Source: Vitrella brassicaformis CCMP3155
Taxonomy: Eukaryota > Protista > Chromerida
DNA: 26,177 nt
Assembly: GCA_001179505.1 (NCBI GenBank)
Contig: CDMY01000734.1
Location: forward strand, 1 to 26,177
Reading direction: 5' to 3'
The position numbers were made by a program, and so were the translations under genes. The notes beneath the pieces are model-generated. The model was given only the letters and a program-made list of their open reading frames with translations. It was not told the origin of the DNA and searched no databases. Numbering within the stretch: the first letter of the stretch is position 1; each line of letters begins with the position of its first letter. Of the stretch, positions 1 to 12,599 are shown piece by piece.

Positions 1-131
1 GAGGCTCAGACGATCACTCCTCTGAGCGCCGAGTGCATGCCGTATGGGTCGCACTCCACATTCTCCTCTAATCTTCCAACGAACAACGACTCAGAGGATT
101 CATTCCAATCGCAAGCTTAGCTCGCAAAAAG

Positions 132-171
132 GTTTAGGGTTAGGGTGTGAGGTTACGAGCCCCTAGGGTTT
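132..171 (+). repeat. Short telomere-like (TTTAGGG/TTAGGG) motif cluster, telo-box-like, upstream of the XRN gene
   Basis: GTTTAGGGTTAGGG at 132-145 and CTAGGGTTT at 163-171. Further partial copies are CCCTAAC at 284-290 and CTAGGG at 318-323. Confidence 0.6.
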
Positions 172-392
172 GAAAAGTTATGAGCTCGGAACTACTAGTT
201 CTTTTTCTTCCCGAAACTCTACCATCTCACGTCGAGATGTATTGTGTCCTACGCCGACGGCTTCCGGTTAACGGCGCTGTCGGCCCTAACTCATTAGGCC
301 GCGGGCGGCATTGGGACTAGGGCGGTGATGCCATCGATTCGAACGGGATCTGTGTGCATGAGCATGGTCGCGTCGAAAGCTGACGAGAGGCG

Positions 393-1195
393 ATGATGTG
401 GATCATGGTGAAACTTGTGCTGGCGCTGCTGGTGGTGGACGGGCTGGTGTGGATGGCCACAGCGGGCATCGCTGGTTTCCACAAGTTCTTCGAGGCCACT
501 TTCAAGGCGAGCCGATCGATCAGTGCACTGAGTGCATGAACCACACAACGGAAGGCACCTGTCCTGCTTGATATATCGAGGACAGACAGACAGACAGATG
601 GACAGACAGAATCATCTTATGGGATTTATTGGCGTGTCGATCTTGTGTCACGTCTGTCTGTCTGTCTGTGTGCTTGCAGGAGGCCGTCAACGAGGACCCG
701 ACGACGCTCGCCCCCTGCAGCCATCTGTGCATTGACCTGAACCAGCTGCTGCACCAGGCACGTGCACCACAACCATCTGACAGAGCAGTCTATGCATGCC
801 ACGATAAAGCACAATCGACTCTTCCCTCCATCCCTCCCTCCCTCCCTGCATGTGTGTCGGCTCGGCTCGGCAGGCGATGACAGGCAAGGGTGCGAGCGTC
901 TCTCGTGGGCTGCGGTTTCGCTTACGGCGGCTGCTGGGCCAATTCAGACCGACGCGCAGGCAAAGCAATGCGTGGATACAGAGAGCGATGGATGGATGGA
1001 TGGCGGGATGGTCATGCCATGCGACGACAGACAGACAGACAGACCAGTGGGTGTATCGTACGTGTGGCGTGTGCAGTGTGGTGATAGCGATCGATGGCTC
1101 CGCACCCCTGGCCAAGTTGATCACACAGAGGAAGAGGCGACTCGCACCGTTGCCAACAGACAAAAAGAAGAGGTACACACACACACAGAGACACA

Positions 1196-1231
<36 letters not shown>

Positions 1232-4200
1232 CAGACAGACGCACAGACGTACCTGCGAGTGCGTCGACGTGCGTGTGTCCATTGATTGATTGCATATATT
1301 GTGCAGGGCGAAGACATTGGAGAAGTTAGCGCTCTCCCCTGGCACCCGTGTGATGGACGAGATGGACAAGACGGTCGCCGCCATCGCACTCGAGTGCATG
1401 AAGCGACAAATGGACAAAGGAAGGAGGCCATCCACGTGAGTGAGTGATGTGAGCAGACAAGACACCAGCGGGGGGGGGGGGCGGGGGCACCACACTCGTG
1501 TAGTGTATGTATGTCTGTAACAGTCAGTGTGGGGTCGTATCGTGTTGTGTGCTGTGCACTGCACTGCACGTGTGTGTGTGTAGATTCTATATCTCGGGGT
1601 CTCGGTCGCCCGGTGAGGGCGAGCTCAAGATATTCGACTGGCTCATGACGGGCATGGCCACACACACACAGCAGAACACCCGGATTTGCATCGTGGGCGG
1701 CGATGCCGACCTCCTCCTGCAGGCACGTACTGTCTGTCTGTACTCATCCAATCCACCCAAGTCACCCCCGCCGACATGTGTCTGTCTGTGCAGGCGATGG
1801 CTCTTCCGGAGGTCCTCGATATTCACGTGCTCGTACCCACAATGCGCAGCAAGCCCCACCCCAAGACGCAGAAGAAGAAGCAAGTACGGACTGTGTTGAC
1901 ACATATGACTGTCACCCACGTCACGGATACACACACGCTCGTCTGGCCTGTCTGTCCGGATGGAATGGCATGGCCTGGTGGCAGGCCTCAGCGGCTGTCC
2001 CCCCCGGCGAGGTGGTGCCATTCCGTGCCTATTCTTTGCGGAAGCTGTGCGAGGTGCTCAAGTGGTACAGCATCGACGTGGACAAGTGGGCGGCCCGGCT
2101 GGACTTCATCCTGTTGATGATCCTCAATGGCAACGACTACGTGCCGCGGCTGCCTGGGGTGGGATTCGACAACCTGCTCGAGGCATACAAACAGGCAAGC
2201 GCTTACCCACCCCACACACGAGGCACACGAGATCTGTCCAGGCGTGTGTGCTCTGTCTGTGTTGTGCTGTGTGTGTTGCAGCTGAAGCGTCGTAAGGCGT
2301 TCGCGGACAGGACCATTGTGCAGATCGACGTCAGAGATGGCGGCAGTGGCAATGGGGAAGGGGATGGCGGTGTGCGCGTGTCGTTCGACCCGGAAATGTT
2401 GTGTGCTCTCATCGACGAGCTGCACCGGTGCTGGGAGTTCGTCGTCTCCCTCGAGGCACTTCACAGAGTCATCTGGCGGCAATGGCAGGTCGGTCGCTGG
2501 GGTGGGGTGGGCGCACAGCAACCACACATGTGATGTGTGTCGTCACTCACTCTGTGGCTGTGTGGCTGGCTGTGTGTGCAGGAGACGGACAGTTTGACAG
2601 GTGAGGAGAAGCGCCTCTCGGCTGCCGCTCCTGCCGGCATCCTCAACGACTGCATCCAACAGAAACGCCTACACGCCGTCCAGGTCAGGGAGACAGGGCA
2701 GCTCGGGTGCAGTGCGTGTGGACAATCGTCTTCTCTCGTGCGCCTTGTGTCTGTCTGCCACACAGGTGGACTTCGAGTCGGCCCCAGAAGGGCATAAGGC
2801 CGTTCTGACGGTGCAGGTCAAGGCGGACGAGGCCTTACAGCGGTGGGAGGCCACTGCCGCAGACAAGGCCACCGCCAAGAGGGAGTGCATCGGCAAGGTA
2901 TGACATCAGGCACACCACAGATGGACAACGCTCAACTATGGCAATACACAGCCTGTTGTGTCCTATGCTGTGCAGTTTCTGCTGGCGACATTTCCCCAGG
3001 ACCGTCGTGTGGCCACAGACATGGTGGCCCACCTGGAGATGCAGCGCAGGAGAAGCCAGCAACGAGCCAACGCTGAGCAAGCAGAGGAGGAGCAGCAGAC
3101 CTCAGCTATCGACCAGACGGCGGTCAGTTGGTGACACAGACAGACAGACAGACAGAGAGGCGGCCTAACACATTTCTCTCTCTGTGTGTGCACAGGAGCA
3201 TGAGACACTGCTGTTGCTGCAGTCCTTAGAGACCGATGAGGAGAAACGTGCCGTCGGCAACCCCTCAGCCGTACTCAACCTGCTCAAAATGGTGTGGTGT
3301 GTGCCTACCTGCCCACCTGTGTTCCCACTCACAAACAACCGAGTCTGTGTGTGTGTGTGTGTGTGCAGAAGAAGGTGTTCGGATCGTCTGCCTTCATGTT
3401 GGATGAGGAGAGGGCCAGTGTGCCGGGCGGATACATCCGCAACGCCACACTCGCCGTCCAACATGGTGGTTGTGGTGGCGGTGACAGTGGACCACCCGAG
3501 GAGGGAGCACTGCTGTCCTCCCACCATTTCCAGGGCCGGTCGGCGGCCAGCATCAAGCAGGCCAAGGCGTCCGCCGTCATGCACGTGAGTGCGTCAGCGA
3601 GAGAGAGACACAGACAGACACCCACGAATCAATCGGCTCAGCTGTGTGTGGTGCCTGCCAGGCTTTGGAGGAGCTGTCGCCTCCTCTGTGTCGCCAACTG
3701 GCCCGGTTTGGGTGGCAGCTGGACGGATCGTGCACACCGGGCAACGTGACAGAGCCTACTGCCGTGAAGGCTTCACCGAGTGCTCCTACCGTGCCGCCCC
3801 CCTCTGTGTCATCTTCCCGCCCCCCGCCCGTCGAGACCATGTTTCCTGCTGTCGATGACTACCTAGAAGGTAAGCTGCGGTGCGCATGGCATGGCTGCAC
3901 AGGGACTCGCATCTCATGTGCTTCGTCTTTTTGTGTCGACTGACTGCCACCGTGTCTGCAGCCATTCGTTGGTGTGTGGCTATGTATGCCGAGGCGCGCT
4001 GCAGCGACTGGTGTGTGCGGTACACGGCCGCCCTGGGCAACGCCACAGGCACACGAGCACCCACCCCATACGCAATACGAGAAAGACTCAAAGGTGGCCC
4101 ACAGCCACAGCAAGCGGTGGCTGGCAGCACGATGGGCCCCCTCCCCTCTGAGTTGGCCGCTCTGGCCGTCCTCCCTGTGCAGGGCGGCCTCCATCTGCTC

Positions 4201-5258
4201 GAGCCGTGGCTGCAGCAGGTCTGCATCTCACGCTCCCTGCTCTCGCGGCCGGCAGAGGCACCCCGAGCTATGCCAGTTGCGCCAACGGATGTGGTGGGCA
4301 GCGACAGCCGACCTGAGACCACCGACGTTGATGGCTATGAGAGTGAGGGCGAAGAGGATGAGGAGGAGTGTTTTGACGAGGTGGAGGAGATGTCTGTGGA
4401 CCAGCTGCCCAGCGAGGGGCTGCAGGTGTCACTCCTGGACATGGCCGTCGGACCCCAATACGAGAACCGCGACCGTGGTAGATTAGATAGAGGCAAACAC
4501 ACACGTGTCGATGCATCTGCACCCACCCGCTGTTTGGAGTGTTTGTCGTTTGTTTGTCGGCAGTTGAGCTGCTGCAGCTGGCGATGGCCTGCAACAGCAC
4601 GTGGCTGAGCCAGAGTGTCCGCGGCAGCAGGTGGCACCGCTACAAGGCTCACAGAAGGAAAAAGGGCTACCACACCACAGGCACACCACCAGCACCAGTA
4701 GCTGAGATCGCTGTGTCCGAGATGCCTCTCTTCGCCCCACGTCCCCGCACAAAGAAGCCACAGACAGCACCGAGGCAAGGACCACCCACACCCCCATCCC
4801 CACCCCCGCAAGCACGCCTCCCCACTATCGACCCGCGTGACAGCAACACCGGTGATGATGGGGCCGCCGTGTCTGTGCCTGCCGCTGCCCCTGCACCCCC
4901 ACCCCCACCCTCTCTCCGCTTTGTGCGCAAACCCAGGAGACGTCGGAAGCTGCCCTCGCCGTCATCTGTGTCGATGATGTTACCGGCCGCTGGTGGCGAC
5001 GATGGTGCCGATGACGACGCTCAGGGGGGAGTGCCGACGTCACTGGTACTCGACTGGCGGGGCGATAAGAGGACTGTGGTGGGTGTGGGTGTGAAAGGTG
5101 TGAGTGTGCGGCCGTCCTCAACCAGGGGTCGACAAGCTATGTCGGTGTTGCGGATGTGTGGGAGGTGGGGTGCGATGGGTGGCGGGGGGCCGGTGGGGAA
5201 AGCGGGGGTGAGTGTCTTAAGTGGTGCGAGGGGAAGAGCAGGGGTCGTGTGTAGATAG
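393..5258 (+). CDS. XRN-family 5'-3' exoribonuclease with N-terminal hydrophobic leader and two inserted dsRNA-binding domains (17 exons, about 1086 aa)
   Basis: Hand-spliced exons: 393-506, 680-757, 874-959, 1077-1172, 1307-1435, 1584-1722, 1794-1883, 1985-2194, 2282-2488, 2582-2683, 2766-2897, 2976-3122, 3196-3291, 3369-3584, 3662-3869, 3962-4477, 4564-5258. They total 3261 nt and all splice phases agree. XRN motifs occur in canonical order: GIAGFHKFF (MGVPKFF), HLCIDLNQLLH (LYLDMNGIIH), RPTRSVVIAIDGSAPLAKLITQRKRR, LSPGT, SPGEGELKI, CIVGGDADL, DFILLMILNGNDYVPRLP, DYLEAIRWCVAMY...DWCVRY...APTP, LPSELAALAVLP. The last exon is low-complexity and Pro-rich, so the true 3' end is less certain. 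Confidence 0.92.
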
Positions 5259-5796
5259 ACAAGGCAGACAGACAGACAGAGAGATGAGAGGAGAGGAGGC
5301 TAGGCTGTCGTGTGTGTGTATTGTAGAATGAATGCGTTTAGCTGACGGCGCGCACGCCGTGTGGTGATTGGATTGGCATGCATGCATGACCATACATCCC
5401 GTCATCTCAAGACCATTTATCGATCGGTCGGTCGGTCGGTCGGTCACGTGTGTGCGTGCGTTGGAGCTCATTTGTGAGACAAGCAAGACATTGATTCACC
5501 ATAGCAGTCAGTGAGGGGCGGGCAGGAAGGAAAAACCACTTCGCATCCCTCGGCCCCCATCGATGGATGGCATCCATCGGCACGGCAAGGCACGCACAAG
5601 TGTCAATCTGTGCGATTCATTCCATCCATCCATCGATCCATCACTCGGCACGCCCCTCCCTCCCTGGTGAGGGCTTTCTGCCGATGACGATGGCGCCAGC
5701 CGCGGCGGCCATCCCCCGCTGGTCGATCAGGTGATGCGCCAGATGCCTAGTCGTGTCGTCACAGGCATGAACCACCTGCATCCAGCCACTCACTCA

Positions 5797-6300: not shown

Positions 6301-9300
6301 AACATCCACCAAGAGACAGAGACCTGGGGGTGGGGGGAGTGGAGTGGCACCTACTTGATCTTGTGGTTGAGCAGGGCGACCGTGGCGTTGCGCATCATGA
6401 CAGCCAGATGGAAGGCCCTGATCGACAGCGGCCTGAAGGACATCTCGAAGTGCACCGCCGTGGCCTTGGTGGCGTCAAGGTGCAGCAGACACCGGGCCAG
6501 CACATGGGGACACGGCACACGCAGAACTATCGACTCGCGCGGCGGCGGCGCGGCCGTCGGGGAGGCCGCCTTGCTCTTCTTGTCCTTGTCCTTCTCACGC
6601 TCTATCTTTAGCAGCAGCTTCGCACCGAAGATGCGGCTCAGATTGGCGAACAGGGAGTCCCACTGGGGGCGAGAGAGCTCACGGCCATCTGGGGGTGGGG
6701 TAAATAGGGTGTGTGGGGTTTTGGGGAGAGGGAGGCACACACGGCTGATGTGATGTGTGTGTTGGCTTGGCTTACAGAATGTTCCGTCTCTGTCTTGGTC
6801 GAGCTCATATAGGTCCAGCCTGTTGGCAACCAGGGGAGGGAGCCTGCCTGTGTGTGCTGTGCATCCGTGTTTGCCTTTCTCTGGCTCGCTCGTTGGGTGG
6901 CTGACCCGTCGTCGAGCATCTCCCGTAGCCTCCCTGGTGTCAGGCCAAGCAGCCCCTTAAGATGGTCGGCATTATTTGGGGATGTCAGCAGCTCACACAC
7001 ATAGTGACGCACCGCTGCACACACACAAACACACACACACACACACACAGATCCATCCATCCATCCACCAGACGCAGCCAGGCACACACAACAGACACGT
7101 GGGTGTGCGTATGTTATGTGCGGGTGGCATGGCACACCGTACCGTCAGTGGCGGTGTGCAGGAGGTTCTGCCAGGCGGTTTGGAACAGGTACATGAAGTC
7201 GGTGCACTGCTGTGGCAGCTCCAGGGCGCGCTTGCACAGCTCCTTGTACTCGGCCCTGACGCACACACACACACACACACGTCACCTCAATCACAAAGCA
7301 GCCCCCCCCCCCCCCCCCCCCCNNNNNNNNNNNNNNNNNNNNNNNNNNNNNNNNNNNNNNNNNNNNNNNNNNNNNNNNNNNNNNNNNNNNNNNNNNNNNN
7401 NNNNNNNNNNNNNNNNNNNNNNNNNNNNNNNNNNNNNNNNNNNNNNNNNNNNNNNNNNNNNNNNNNNNNNNNNNNNNNNNNNNNNNNNNNNNNNNNNNNN
7501 NNNNNNNNNNNNNNNNNNNNNNNNNNNNNNNNNNNNNNNNNNNNNNNNNNNNNNNNNNNNNNNNNNNNNNNNNNNNNNNNNNNNNNNNNNNNNNNNNNNN
7601 NNNNNNNNNNNNNNNNNNNNNNCCCCCCCCCCCTCCCTCCCGCACCTCATTTTCTCTCTGGCGCAGTTGTGGCTGACCATCATTGCGGGGTTGTGGAGGT
7701 CGGCCGAGGTGAGGACACACGCCGCGTCGTCCTCGGCGGTGTCGAACATGCAGCCGTGCCATATCTCCACACACCGGATGGCTGCACCCAAGTGCAACTC
7801 AGCTGCATTCGATTCGCACGACCATCACACACAACCACAGAGAGAGGATGTGTGTGGATGAGGTGGTGGCGGGTGAAATGACGTGACGTACGTGGAATGG
7901 TCTTGTTCCTGCAGCTGGGCGAGAGGGCGGACGGGAAGAGCTGCAGGCAGCCATCCAGCCGGACAGGCTGACACACACACGCATGCATCCATGGGTATAC
8001 GCGCGCACATACACTCACACACACACACACCTCAGGCCCTTTGTCTCTCTGTTTCTCTGCGTGTGTGTCGGGTCAGGTACACCCCTCCATCCATCCATCC
8101 ATCTACACGCACCTGCAGCAGCACGTGTTCCGGCCCCTGCAGCATGCGATCCACAAAGTCACTGCAGAACTGAGTGTACGCCTCGCGACGGGGCGGGGGG
8201 CCAACCTGCACACACCACCCACACACAGACACAGAGACGTTGTAAGCCCCCTCCCTCCCTCCCTCTCCCTCCTTGAGTGTGCCTACCGACCTTGTTGTGT
8301 CTGGAGACCATGTAGTTGGCGACTTGTTGGAACTGCACCATCACCACCGCCCCCACATCCACACCCGTGTCGCGCAACACGCACTCACGCCAGTAGGTCG
8401 CACTCGCGTACAGGTGACGCACGTTGTCATGCTGCAGGGCAGTGACAGTGGGCAGAGTGTGTGTGGGCCTTAAGGGAAGCATACCTACCACGAACATCTG
8501 AGGTGCGTTGACAACGGCAATCATGACCACGTGGTTGTTGTGAGACCCGCCGCACCGCAGGTCCTGACCCACTGCATTCATGGAGGCATCGATCGCGTCA
8601 ACACAACCACCCACACGCACCGAAGGAGAGGAGTCTTATGGCGTACAGGCGCCCCTCTTAGCTTGGCTGTGTTGTGTCTTCTGCTCACGCGAGAATGGCC
8701 AGAGGCTTATGATTTGTGGCAGCAGCGGCGCCCGCGCGCCGCTTGTGAAGCTGTCCTGCACCGCCCGGATGACCGCCTGAACGCACACAGACACGCACAC
8801 AGGTCTTTCTTTGTTTCTTTGTGTGCATGTCATGTGTGTGCGTGTCCAATATATGCCTGCCTGTCGTGGTGCGATATGGTTGTTGTTGGAGAAGAAGAGC
8901 TCGTCCCGCGAGCCGAGCAGAAACAGCTCGCCGTCGTGCATGAACCCCACATCGTGCGTGCGATAATATGCCACTTCTACAGAAATGGGTGGATGGATGG
9001 AACAGCCATCTATCTCATTCATCTGTGTGGTGTGTGTCCCTCCCTCCCTCCCTCCCTCCCTCCCTCTCTCCCTCTCTCCCTCTCTCCCTCCCACCGACAT
9101 ACCTGCCTTTTGTCCTTTGTCATCGTCGACTTTGATGCGTGTCTGCACATATCGCTGCATGTCAATTGGGTGGAAGTAGTTGCATACCACGCTCCCCTTG
9201 AAGTAGATCTCCCCACAGACACCCGCCGGGCACACTTCCCTCGTGAAGGGGTTGACGATGCGCAGGTCGACATCGTCCGCCGGCGCCCCGTGGCTGACGA

Positions 9301-11542: not shown

Positions 11543-12599
11543 ATGAGCGCCTCATGTGGCTTCCTTCGTCGGAGTCTGCCGCGACTGAACCTCTACATCC
11601 GCCTGGGAGTCCGTCAAAACGCTTCACCTGAAGAAATCAAAGCCGCCTTCCGCGAACTGGCCAAGAAGTAAGCAACACAGCTGCTAGTTGTTCATTGGTG
11701 GTCATCTGTGTGCCTGTCTGTCGCGCCAGGTATCATCCTGACCTCAATCCCGGCCTCCCCGAAGCTCTCGAGAAGGTCAGATCCACAGAGTGAAGTGAGC
11801 ACTAAGGTTTCGCACGTGTGTGTGGAGTGTGTTGTGTGGCGTTGGATGTATGGTATGGATGTGTGTGAAGTTCAAGAAGATCCAGGAAGCGTATTCGGTT
11901 CTGTCCAACGATTCGTCGCGGCGTCAGTACGACAGCTCCAGCCACTGGGACGGCGATGTGTGGCCCAACCGGTCACGGCCGCCACCCGGTGCACGCCCGT
12001 GGGGGCCGTCCGATAGAGACAATGTGTGGAACAAGACCGAGACCATGGGCCACTTCAACTGGAGGAAACGGCACGAGGAGTGGGCCAGACGAGAGGCCAG
12101 CCACTACGCGGACACTGACTCGACCGACGATGGTGGTGGTGACTCAGCCGACGGGTCAGCAGCGTCATCCGCCACCGCATCGCCTAGCAGCAGCAGCCGC
12201 AGCGGGCGGTCGCGTCCGATCTTCCGGACGAGCGAGGCCAACGCGGAGGCCATGAGGAAGCGGATGAGCCGGGAGGAGCTCGAGGAAGCTGAAAGGGAGC
12301 GCGACGCACAGATGGACGCGTGGCGTGCCGAGGTGGAGCGCCAATTCGCGCAGATGAAGCAGGCCAAGGAGGAGGCAGAGGGCCCGCAGCTGGGCGTGGC
12401 GTCGGGGTGGTTCCGTCGGCGGCACCAAACGGCGAGTGAGTCGGCGCACGAGCGGTTCGAGAAGAAGAAGGACGTGTGGGACCGGGCAGAGGCGCGGGAG
12501 GCAGCGGATACGTGGTGGGTGAGGTTGCGGGGGGCGCTGTTTGTCGCGGTGGCCGCTCCGCTGGTGTTCACATTCGGAAAAGTGTTTCTCTATGGGTGA
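11543..12599 (+). CDS. J-domain (DnaJ class C) co-chaperone with C-terminal transmembrane helix, possibly mitochondrial
   Basis: Exons 11543-11667, 11730-11775, 11871-12599. The J domain reads [63 protein letters not shown], with HPD intact. The N-terminus is R/S-rich and acid-free (MSASCGFLRRSLPR). The C-terminal segment LRGALFVAVAAPLVFTFGKVFLYG is hydrophobic. Confidence 0.93.

What the first reader, a model, noticed from the sequence alone, without database searches (positions are those of the whole stretch)
2582..3690. XRN exoribonuclease with two dsRNA-binding domains inserted inside the nuclease fold
Seen: between the XRN conserved region 1 (GNDYVPRLP) and region 2 (DYLEAIRW), the spliced exons encode two dsRBD-like units. 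Unit 1 is PAGILNDCIQQKRLHAVQVDFESAPEGHKAVLTVQV...WEATAADKATAKRECIGKFL. Unit 2 is NPSAVLNLLKMKK...PGGYIRNATLAV...FQGRSAASIKQAKASAVMHALEEL. Both fit the dsRBD consensus P...L.E..Q....G.SKK.A.Q.AA..AL..L. The XRN acidic catalytic residues (DLN, DG, EGE, DAD, ND) and the basic 5'-phosphate pocket (K..Q..RR) are all retained. Established: Xrn1 and Xrn2/Rat1 act on single-stranded 5'-P RNA, stall at strong structure, and have no dsRBDs in this linker. Inference: this is an active 5'-3' exonuclease steered to duplex or highly structured RNA (antiviral, small-RNA or organellar transcript processing), which could define an undescribed XRN subfamily. Because the domains are split across six exons, ORF-based annotation would miss them.
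Basis: partly seen in the sequence, partly recalled or inferred. Interest (0 to 1): 0.82.

Follow-up and report, generated by a model that had tools for sequence, protein, structure and literature searches.

The report
XRN exonuclease carrying two built-in dsRBDs
This gene encodes an apparently active RNA-chewing enzyme of the XRN family that carries two copies of a double-stranded-RNA-binding domain in a loop that is normally floppy. It belongs to a widespread algal XRN branch that I did not find described in the papers I could search.

Summary
A 17-exon gene (393-5258, + strand, 1086 aa) encodes an XRN-family nuclease. All seven catalytic acidic residues and the 5'-phosphate pocket are present. 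Between CR1 and CR2, six phase-0 exons (2582-3869) encode two units, aa 398-468 and aa 532-621. Intron-free contigs from public runs confirm junctions 10>11, 14>15, 15>16 and 16>17.

The dsRBD call holds, but only through relatives. Pfam on single exons and AlphaFold on exon 14 alone gave nothing. The spliced units have no reference, so they could not be given to Pfam or AlphaFold.

Relatives in brown algae, diatoms, cryptophytes and other algae carry one domain at the same site:
- It hits Pfam dsrm (best E 2e-5, above the gathering cutoff).
- Its profile hits solved dsRBDs (DRB4, ADAR1, HYL1).
- The diatom version folds as alpha-beta-beta-beta-alpha, and 49 of its 50 best structural matches are dsRBDs.

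Both window units match this domain's profile: 22.9 and 13.3 bits, with 0 of 2000 shuffles reaching either score. They share an intron position and phase in helix alpha2, which points to a tandem duplication.

Databases name these proteins only "XRN", and no paper found describes the architecture. Function is inferred, not shown. The leader before the XRN start suggests compartment targeting; diatom relatives carry plastid-type leaders.

The parts
393..5258 (+). Whole gene model: 17 exons, 1086 aa. Five of the 16 introns have GC donors; the other 11 have GT donors.
   Evidence: Frame-by-frame reading and splicing. cDNA-like contigs confirm the 3' half. BLAST to relatives is continuous from aa 7-25 to aa 320-450.
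393..464 (+). Hydrophobic leader of 24 residues. It ends at the Gly (G25, nt 465) that aligns with Gly2 of canonical XRNs.
   Evidence: P0001-to-XRN1 alignment combined with window-to-P0001 alignment. The same layout is seen in Nemacystus P0134 and in P0131. Cleavage and targeting are inferred.
465..2488 (+). XRN conserved region 1 (exons 1-9). It holds D57, H63, D99, K106, Q110, R113, R114, E179, E181, D208, D210 and D295.
   Evidence: Pfam XRN_N on exon 6, E 3.5e-9. Exon 6 against human XRN1, E 7e-5. Exon 4 aligns with XRN2. Residue positions.
2624..2996 (+). dsRBD unit 1, aa 398-468, spread over exons 10-12. Helix alpha1 begins 'PAGILND'. A loop His is H427. Helix alpha2 begins 'KATAK'.
   Evidence: Smith-Waterman against the Pfam-dsrm-positive unit of P0139: z 8.9, 0 of 5000 shuffles. 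A7 profile: 22.9 bits, 0 of 2000 shuffles. hhalign against A7: 73%, E 3e-5, 71 columns.
2997..3258 (+). Charged spacer, probably helical, aa 469-531, between the two units.
   Evidence: Sequence only. No family hit on exon 12 or exon 13.
3259..3682 (+). dsRBD unit 2, aa 532-621, spread over exons 13-15. Helix alpha1 is 'PSAVLNLLKMKK'. A Gly-rich loop sits between the presumed strands beta2 and beta3. Helix alpha2 begins 'KQAK'.
   Evidence: A7 profile: 13.3 bits, 0 of 2000 shuffles. hhalign against A7: E 1.2e-3 over 79 columns. Against linker units of relatives: z 4.3-6.6. Language-model features of exon 14 lie nearest to dsrm clusters, score 0.85. AlphaFold on exon 14 alone was inconclusive.
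2898..2975 (+). Intron inside helix alpha2 of unit 1, phase 0, six residues after the 'AK' motif (K461|F462).
   Evidence: It is at the same place and phase as the intron of unit 2.
3585..3661 (+). Intron inside helix alpha2 of unit 2, phase 0, six residues after the 'AK' motif (H614|A615).
   Evidence: The junction is confirmed by X1 record 2.
3857..4191 (+). XRN conserved region 2, from 'DYLEAIRW' to beyond 'LAALAVLP'.
   Evidence: Alignment with relatives. tblastn to L007, E 0.004-0.006. Weak XRN_M hits at the equivalent place in relatives.
4192..5258 (+). C-terminal tail: acidic, then Pro-rich and Arg-rich. No further dsRBD was detected.
   Evidence: The A7 profile gives only a non-significant third match. 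Junction 16>17 is confirmed. The stop codon position was not checked with reads.

Best explanation
The gene encodes a catalytically competent 5'-3' exoribonuclease of a distinct XRN branch found in algae with red-type complex plastids. In this branch the CR1-CR2 linker, which is disordered in Xrn2, has become the site of a dsRBD. In this genome the dsRBD exons were duplicated in tandem, giving two units joined by a charged spacer.

Proposed mechanism (inferred):
- The flexibly tethered dsRBDs bind A-form duplex parts of a substrate. Unit 1 keeps most of the canonical contact pattern; unit 2 keeps only part of it.
- Binding raises the enzyme's affinity for structured RNAs and holds them while the XRN core threads and digests the 5'-monophosphate strand.
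- This resembles what the zinc finger inserted in Xrn2 does for structured substrates.
- The 24-residue hydrophobic leader ends exactly at the Gly that is the mature N-terminus of ordinary XRNs. This suggests a cleaved targeting signal and action inside a membrane-bound compartment. Diatom relatives carry plastid-type bipartite leaders.

Shown: the gene structure, splicing of the 3' half, XRN membership, conserved catalytic residues, homology of both units to a Pfam-positive dsRBD with a dsRBD fold, and the width of the subfamily.

Inferred: nuclease activity, RNA binding, the kind of substrate, leader cleavage, and localisation.
For: - XRN membership.
- Splicing.
- The linker domain of relatives is a dsRBD by sequence. 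Pfam dsrm hits 4 of 5 units, best 2.1e-5 and 25.5 bits against a cutoff of 23.
- The A7 profile hits 18 dsRBD proteins among 19 solved-structure matches: DRB4 2e-4, ADAR1 5e-4, HYL1 2e-3.
- hhalign of A7 against an RNase III dsRBD profile: 78%, E 2e-5.
- Fold: the AlphaFold model of the diatom unit has pLDDT 81.8 and topology H-E-E-E-H. 49 of its 50 best matches among 48,161 solved chains are dsRBDs, Z 5.3-8.4.
- A7 against the diatom domain alignment A6: 93%, E 3e-7.
- Window units: (figures given under parts). BLAST alignments to P0139, P0142, P0131 and P0132 run without a break from CR1 into unit 1.
- Duplication: the same intron place and phase in helix alpha2 of both units. Unit 1 against unit 2 gives a collinear alignment with p about 0.04.
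- Precedent: the Xrn2 linker is disordered, and a zinc finger inserted in the core promotes decay of structured RNA (PMC9512700).
- Leaders.
Against: - No direct fold or Pfam test of the window's own intact units was possible.
- Pfam on single exons found no dsrm. AlphaFold on exon 14 alone gave pLDDT 59.6 and no fold.
- Profiles of the diatom domain and of viral RNase III dsRBDs do not detect the window units.
- Unit 2 matches the A7 profile significantly only in its last third (aa 595-623).
- Unit 2 and the diatom domain lack the loop His and the helix alpha1 Glu of RNA-binding dsRBDs (by eye).
- Many diatom members have a long acidic insert in the beta1-beta2 loop.
- The best structural matches include protein-binding dsRBDs: STAU1 RBD5, TRBP dsRBD3 and Loqs dsRBD3.
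- The window's leader has no transit-peptide-like stretch, so plastid import cannot be inferred for this protein.
- The 5' end of the gene is not confirmed by reads.
Confidence: 0.62

Rival explanations
1. The units have a dsRBD fold but act as protein-binding or dimerisation modules (type B dsRBDs), not as RNA binders. They would recruit partner proteins or pair two nuclease molecules.
For: The top structural matches of the diatom unit are the protein-binding STAU1 RBD5 (Z 8.4), Staufen dsRBD5, TRBP dsRBD3, Loqs dsRBD3, DRB7.2/DRB4 and PACT D3. The RNA-contact pattern is incomplete in unit 2 and in diatoms. Many diatom members have acidic loop inserts.
Against: By eye, unit 1 keeps a helix alpha1 'LND', a loop His (H427) and a 'K..AK' start of helix alpha2. 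RNA-binding dsRBDs (DGCR8, Loqs-PB, DCL4, HYL1, RNase III) score within one Z unit of the protein-binding ones. The A7 profile's best sequence matches are RNA-binding dsRBDs of DRB4, ADAR1 and HYL1.
Confidence: 0.22
2. There is only one real dsRBD. It is split by a large insert in its beta1-beta2 loop, as in diatoms where that loop holds a long acidic insert. The inner halves of the two 'units' would be insert sequence that merely looks like a dsRBD.
For: In the multiple alignment, the relatives' single domain pairs with the start of unit 1 and the end of unit 2. The A7 profile matches unit 1 at positions 11-69 and unit 2 at positions 56-84. Diatom members do carry inserts at that loop.
Against: hhalign aligns each unit to the whole profile: 71 and 79 columns, each ending at the conserved Pro. 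Unit 1 aligns end to end with the Nemacystus unit. Unit 2 has its own 'P..VLN.L..KK' helix. Both units have the same intron place and phase in helix alpha2.
Confidence: 0.1
3. Artefact or dead gene. Either the exon model is wrong, or the protein is an inactive XRN relic whose insert is drifting low-complexity sequence.
For: The 5' junctions and five GC donors are not confirmed by the reads shown. This protein was not found in the protein collections. The His of 'GEGEHK' is Leu here.
Against: Intron-free contigs match four junctions without a single difference. All catalytic and pocket residues are kept. Relatives across several algal phyla keep the same architecture. The His-to-Val/Leu change is shared by the whole subfamily.
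Confidence: 0.04

Closest known systems
Xrn2/Rat1 and Xrn1 (canonical eukaryotic 5'-3' exoribonucleases)
   Same: CR1 and CR2 core. Seven acidic residues, a stacking His, and a K/Q/R/R 5'-phosphate pocket. The fold starts at a Gly. Solved XRN1/XRN2 chains are the only solved-structure matches (P0001 best E 2e-19; exon 6).
   Different: The canonical CR1-CR2 linker is disordered and holds no domain (PMC9512700). Here it holds two dsRBDs. There is a hydrophobic leader in front of the fold. Subfamily signatures differ ('PLAKLITQRKRR', 'GEGE[LV]K'). The Xrn1 D1-D4 domains and the Rai1-binding and zinc-finger features of Xrn2 were not seen.
CCHC zinc finger inserted in a loop of the Xrn2 core
   Same: An accessory nucleic-acid-binding module inserted into the XRN core. 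It is reported to aid RNA binding and decay of structured substrates (PMC9512700). This is the nearest functional precedent.
   Different: A different module (about 15-residue zinc knuckle against 70-90-residue dsRBDs). A different insertion site (a loop within CR1 against the CR1-CR2 linker).
RNase III, Dicer and Drosha-DGCR8 (nuclease plus dsRBD)
   Same: A nuclease joined to dsRBDs that position duplex RNA. The linker domain's profile matches RNase III dsRBDs and DRB4, HYL1, TRBP and DGCR8.
   Different: Those are endonucleases that cut both strands of a duplex, and their dsRBDs are terminal. Here the partner is a single-strand-threading exonuclease and the dsRBDs sit inside its fold.
Unstudied 'XRN 5'-3' exonuclease' entries of diatoms and brown algae (for example Fragilaria crotonensis, Seminavis robusta, Fistulifera solaris, Nitzschia inconspicua, Nemacystus decipiens g9017)
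   Same: The same subfamily: 27-38% identity over CR1. A leader in front of the fold. A dsRBD in the linker at the same place.
   Different: They have one linker dsRBD. Diatoms add one or two C-terminal dsRBD-fold domains and long bipartite leaders with an 'AF' cleavage-type motif. The window has two linker units and no C-terminal one.
RNase J of plant and green-algal chloroplasts (from my own knowledge)
   Same: If this subfamily works in plastids, it would fill the same role: 5'-3' trimming of organellar transcripts.
   Different: Unrelated fold (beta-CASP metallo-beta-lactamase) and bacterial origin. A plastid location for the window protein is not shown.

Membership tests
XRN 5'-3' exoribonuclease family | Match to the XRN_N profile (Pfam PF03159) | tested here: met
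   Exon 6 alone: E 3.5e-9, 36.9 bits against a cutoff of 22.9. Relatives: 1e-23 to 1e-41.
XRN 5'-3' exoribonuclease family | Seven conserved acidic residues that hold two metal ions | tested here: met
   D57, D99, E179, E181, D208, D210 and D295. Aligned with XRN1/XRN2 and through P0001.
XRN 5'-3' exoribonuclease family | Basic pocket for the 5'-monophosphate (K, Q, R, R) and a stacking His | tested here: met
   K106, Q110, R113, R114 and H63.
XRN 5'-3' exoribonuclease family | Second conserved region (CR2) after the linker | tested here: inconclusive
   'DYLEAIRW...' aligns with the relatives' CR2. Pfam XRN_M gives only weak hits in relatives, E 0.04-0.1, and none on exon 16.
XRN 5'-3' exoribonuclease family | 5'-monophosphate-dependent processive exonuclease activity | not testable with these tools
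   Needs recombinant protein.
dsRBD (Pfam dsrm, PF00035) | Match to the dsrm profile | tested here: inconclusive
   Single exons of the window: no hit. Units at the same position in relatives: 4 of 5 hit dsrm, one above the gathering cutoff.
dsRBD (Pfam dsrm, PF00035) | Significant homology of the window units to dsrm-positive domains | tested here: met
   Unit 1: z 8.9 against P0139; 22.9 bits on A7; hhalign E 3e-5. Unit 2: 13.3 bits on A7; hhalign E 1.2e-3. No shuffle reached either profile score.
dsRBD (Pfam dsrm, PF00035) | alpha-beta-beta-beta-alpha fold | tested here: inconclusive
   Met for the diatom unit: pLDDT 81.8, H-E-E-E-H, and 49 of 50 best solved matches are dsRBDs. For the window, only exon 14 could be folded, and the result was not confident.
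dsRBD (Pfam dsrm, PF00035) | Canonical RNA-contact pattern: helix alpha1 acidic or amide residue, loop His, and K-K-x-A-K at the start of helix alpha2 | tested here: inconclusive
   By eye against the pattern known from the literature. Unit 1 has 'LND', H427 and 'K..AK'. Unit 2 has only 'K.AK'. No binding test was done.
Plastid-targeted proteins of complex red plastids | Bipartite leader: signal peptide, aromatic residue at the cleavage site, then a transit peptide | tested here: not met
   The window has a 24-residue hydrophobic leader that abuts the fold, with no transit-like stretch. Diatom relatives: 70 of 70 have a hydrophobic core. 62 of 70 have an [AGSC]F motif after it, against 38 of 70 in shuffled controls. 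No dedicated predictor was available.

The most novel reading that the evidence does not exclude
This is a member of an undescribed, ancient XRN lineage shared by algae with red-derived complex plastids (ochrophytes, cryptophytes, haptophytes, chromerids). The lineage would be sent into the plastid or its surrounding membranes. There it would serve as the 5'-3' exoribonuclease that shapes organellar transcripts, with embedded dsRBDs recognising stem-loops or antisense duplexes. That would be a host-derived replacement or partner for bacterial-type RNase J.
Probability: 0.25. Interest if true: 0.85.

Novelty: new variant of a known kind. Interest (0 to 1): 0.68.

Why it matters
- XRN enzymes are thought to work on single strands and to rely on partners or small inserts to cope with structure. 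An XRN with full dsRBDs built into its own catalytic domain, kept across several algal phyla, is a new way of joining duplex recognition to 5'-3' decay.
- It can be tested directly: express the protein with and without the units, on duplex and single-stranded substrates.
- The leaders in front of the fold are plastid-type in diatoms. They raise the possibility that a eukaryotic XRN was recruited into complex plastids, whose RNA-processing nucleases are largely unknown.
- On the practical side, current annotation names about 200 such proteins only "XRN" and misses the dsRBDs.

Tried and rejected
- Pfam on ten single exons found only XRN_N.
- Exon 14 against solved-structure sequences gave nothing.
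- A representative-library search with exons 8-9 gave three fragments and not the window's own protein.
- A word-index search with exon 14 gave nothing.
- Language-model features gave dsrm as a lead for exon 14 but nothing for exon 11.
- The diatom-based profiles A4, A5 and A6 do not detect the window units.
- Those profiles did not hit solved dsRBDs by sequence either. Pfam did not find dsrm in five full-length relatives from metagenome contigs (L007-L012).
- E. coli RNase III relatives from genome contigs were all 96-100% identical, so they were useless for a profile.
- A dsRBD profile built from 117 RNase III genes on viral contigs recognised neither the window units nor the diatom domain, so that negative result carries no weight.
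- AlphaFold on exon 14 without an alignment gave pLDDT 59.6.
- I did not fold exon 14 with the diatom alignment, because that homology was not significant and the result would have been driven by the alignment.
- The spliced protein and the spliced units have no reference. They were used only in scripts and were never handed to Pfam, AlphaFold, the Atlas or the protein searches.
- Supplementary files of PMC5462543 are not held.
Full report
**Gene and observation.** The + strand of 393-5258 can be spliced into a 17-exon reading frame of 1086 aa. Eleven donors are GT and five are GC (after exons 1, 2, 3, 6 and 8). Introns are 71-173 nt long and rich in (CAGA)n and (GT)n runs. Exons 10-15 (2582-3869) all start in phase 0. 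They lie between 'GNDYVPRLP' (aa 293-301) and 'DYLEAIRW' (aa 680-687).

Two runs hold intron-free contigs without a single difference:
- X2 record 9 joins exon 10 to exon 11.
- X1 record 2 joins exons 14, 15 and 16.
- X1 record 3 joins exons 16 and 17.
- X1 record 1 carries exon 12 in its middle.

A contig that skips introns must come from spliced RNA, whatever the run's label. The junctions of exons 1-9 and 12-14 were not among the rows shown. They rest on frame continuity and homology.

**XRN membership.**
- Exon 6 alone hits Pfam XRN_N at E 3.5e-9 and human XRN1 at E 7e-5.
- Exon 4 aligns with the 'DG.AP.AK...QR.RR' segment of XRN2.
- Through these alignments and through P0001, the seven acidic residues are D57, D99, E179, E181, D208, D210 and D295. 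The stacking His is H63. The phosphate pocket is K106, Q110, R113 and R114.
- CR2 is recognisable by alignment with relatives.
- The fold starts at G25, which aligns with Gly2 of XRN1. Twenty-four mostly hydrophobic residues precede it.

**First attempts on the insert failed.**
- Pfam on single exons found no dsrm.
- Solved-structure sequences gave nothing for exon 14.
- The window's own protein is absent from both protein collections.
- The spliced units have no reference, so they could not be handed to Pfam, AlphaFold or the Atlas. I used them only in scripts.
- Exon 14 alone, about 80% of unit 2, lies nearest to three dsrm clusters by language-model features (score 0.85, a lead only).
- Exon 14 folded without an alignment to pLDDT 59.6 with no defined fold.

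**Relatives.** The search with exons 8-9 gave P0001. A metagenome scan seeded with the 'LMI[LM]NGNDY' block gave eleven loci. Several of these hold intron-free genes of 900-1290 aa.

A search with one of them returned 186 proteins. The named ones are all diatoms (Fragilaria, Seminavis, Fistulifera, Nitzschia, Amphora, Cylindrotheca). They are named only 'XRN' or 'hypothetical' and carry only XRN_N as a precomputed Pfam domain.

A search with P0001 added Guillardia, the brown algae Laminaria, Discosporangium and Nemacystus (identified), Chrysoparadoxa, and the haptophytes Prymnesium and Emiliania. The window protein is 27-38% identical to these over CR1. The alignments to P0139, P0142, P0131 and P0132 run on without a break into unit 1.

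**The linker domain is a dsRBD.**
- Diatom version, by fold:
  - Folded with 45 sequences, it gives pLDDT 81.8, pTM 0.68 and the order helix-strand-strand-strand-helix.
  - Foldseek's best rows are dsRBDs, but at weak E-values; the best is 0.02.
  - The structural aligner gives Z 8.4 to STAU1 RBD5, 8.0 to DGCR8 and 7.9 to Loqs-PB.
  - In the search of 48,161 representative chains that does not depend on Foldseek, 49 of the 50 best are dsRBDs.
  - These Z values are middling. The weight lies in how uniform the list is.
- Non-diatom members, by sequence:
  - Five non-diatom members have a more canonical unit. These are Nemacystus P0134, Chrysoparadoxa P0132 and three unnamed proteins, P0131, P0139 and P0142.
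  - Pfam dsrm hits four of the five over nearly the whole profile. P0142 scores E 2.1e-5 and 25.5 bits against a cutoff of 23. P0139 scores 8e-4, P0132 7e-3 and P0134 0.11.
  - Their profile (A7) finds DRB4 (2e-4), ADAR1 (5e-4), HYL1, TRBP, DGCR8, PKR and others. 18 of the 19 matches with E up to 1 are dsRBD proteins.
- Links between the profiles:
  - Profile-profile comparison ties A7 to the diatom domain (93%, E 3e-7) and to an RNase III dsRBD profile (78%, E 2e-5).
  - In diatoms the linker domain and the one or two C-terminal domains cross-hit each other.

**The window's two units.**
- Unit 1 (aa 398-468):
  - Against the P0139 unit it gives a Smith-Waterman score of 74, z 8.9, reached by 0 of 5000 shuffles.
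  - On the A7 profile it scores 22.9 bits, where the best of 2000 shuffles is 9.2.
  - hhalign aligns 71 columns from helix alpha1 to the closing Pro, 73%, E 3e-5.
- Unit 2 (aa 532-621):
  - It scores 13.3 bits on A7, where the best shuffle is 6.2.
  - It gives z 4.3-6.6 against three relatives' units.
  - It aligns over 79 columns at E 1.2e-3. Its strongest part is strand beta3 to helix alpha2.
  - Its 'PSAVLNLLKMKK' mirrors 'PAGVLNELMQKK' of P0139.
- The two units compared:
  - They align collinearly with each other, p about 0.04.
  - In both, a phase-0 intron lies six residues after the 'AK' of helix alpha2, and a Pro follows 13 residues after that 'AK'. I read this as a tandem duplication of the dsRBD exons.
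- The rival reading is one dsRBD split by a large loop insert. The multiple alignment and the diatom loop inserts suggest it. The full-length alignments of each unit argue against it.

**Mechanism.** What is shown ends at the architecture. In Xrn2 the CR1-CR2 linker is disordered. The N-terminal helix is needed for activity and is thought to exclude duplex RNA. A zinc finger inserted in the core helps RNA binding and decay of structured substrates (PMC9512700).

By analogy, I propose that tethered dsRBDs capture duplex regions and feed structured RNAs to the core. By eye, unit 1 keeps 'LND' in helix alpha1, a loop His (H427) and 'K..AK'. Unit 2 keeps only 'K.AK'. Diatom members often carry long acidic inserts in the beta1-beta2 loop. 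Protein-binding dsRBDs are among the best structural matches, so a protein-binding role is a serious rival.

**Leader and localisation.**
- In 70 diatom members that start with Met and have at least 35 residues before the fold, all have a hydrophobic core.
- 62 of these 70 have an [AGSC]F motif after the core, against 38 of 70 shuffled controls.
- This fits the known diatom plastid presequence pattern. It is a crude test without a dedicated predictor.
- The window, Nemacystus P0134 and P0131 have a short hydrophobic leader that abuts the fold.
- The leader therefore suggests entry into the secretory or plastid route, or a membrane anchor. Nothing more can be said.
- Another agent's unchecked note calls this genome Vitrella. 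I did not verify that.

**Novelty.** Six literature searches found no description of an XRN with a dsRBD or of a plastid XRN in these algae. The survey of eukaryotic mRNA decay factors (PMC5862402) does not mention one. I file it as a new variant of a known kind.

Noticed in passing
window 507-2281 (introns after exons 1, 2, 3, 6 and 8): Five of the 16 introns of this gene would use GC rather than GT donors (GC-AG). That is far above the usual share of about 1%. None of these five junctions was among the read rows shown.
   Followed up: partly
window 131-175: Short telomere-like stretch (TTTAGGG and TTAGGG units) about 220 bases upstream of the start codon.
   Followed up: no
window 650-1050 and 5255-5285: (CAGA)n, (GGAT)n and similar runs attract hundreds of unrelated contigs and false joints when reads are laid on them (depth 350-3000 against about 10-60 elsewhere). 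These are dispersed microsatellite-like repeats of this genome.
   Followed up: no
window about 7320-7640: A run of N (assembly gap). It explains the dip in G+C to 0.43 in the 7001-8000 bin.
   Followed up: no
window 11799-12596 (+): An open frame with a J-domain-like stretch ('KIQEAYSVLSNDSSRRQYD') followed by a Ser-rich and acidic tail. It is probably an exon of a DnaJ-type co-chaperone gene.
   Followed up: no
runs X1 and X2: Two transcriptome-like runs filed under two different organism labels hold contigs of this gene without a single difference. Either the organism is the same under two names, or one sample carries the other over.
   Followed up: no
P0004-P0123 (diatom relatives), residue before 'G[IM][KR]GF': In 18 members a Met sits directly before the Gly that starts the XRN fold, and 14 further entries begin there ('MGIKGF'). 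A second start codon could give a leaderless form and so two locations from one gene.
   Followed up: partly
P0006-P0114 and L009:5376-5813, L012:3513-3881: Many diatom members carry a 30-80-residue run of Asp/Glu in the beta1-beta2 loop of the linker dsRBD, the loop that contacts the RNA minor groove in canonical dsRBDs. It could mimic nucleic acid or hold the domain shut.
   Followed up: no
L002:3818-4152: The cryptophyte-like contig repeats the segment that encodes 'VEWKGRRFTGMYPPP...' three times in a row, at the exon-intron border inside its dsRBD. This is either a tandem duplication or an assembly artefact.
   Followed up: no
P0140, P0160, P0188 (haptophyte and similar members); P0133, P0144: These subfamily members have an Ala-rich or acidic linker without a recognisable dsRBD. 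The dsRBD was therefore either gained after the branch arose or lost several times.
   Followed up: no
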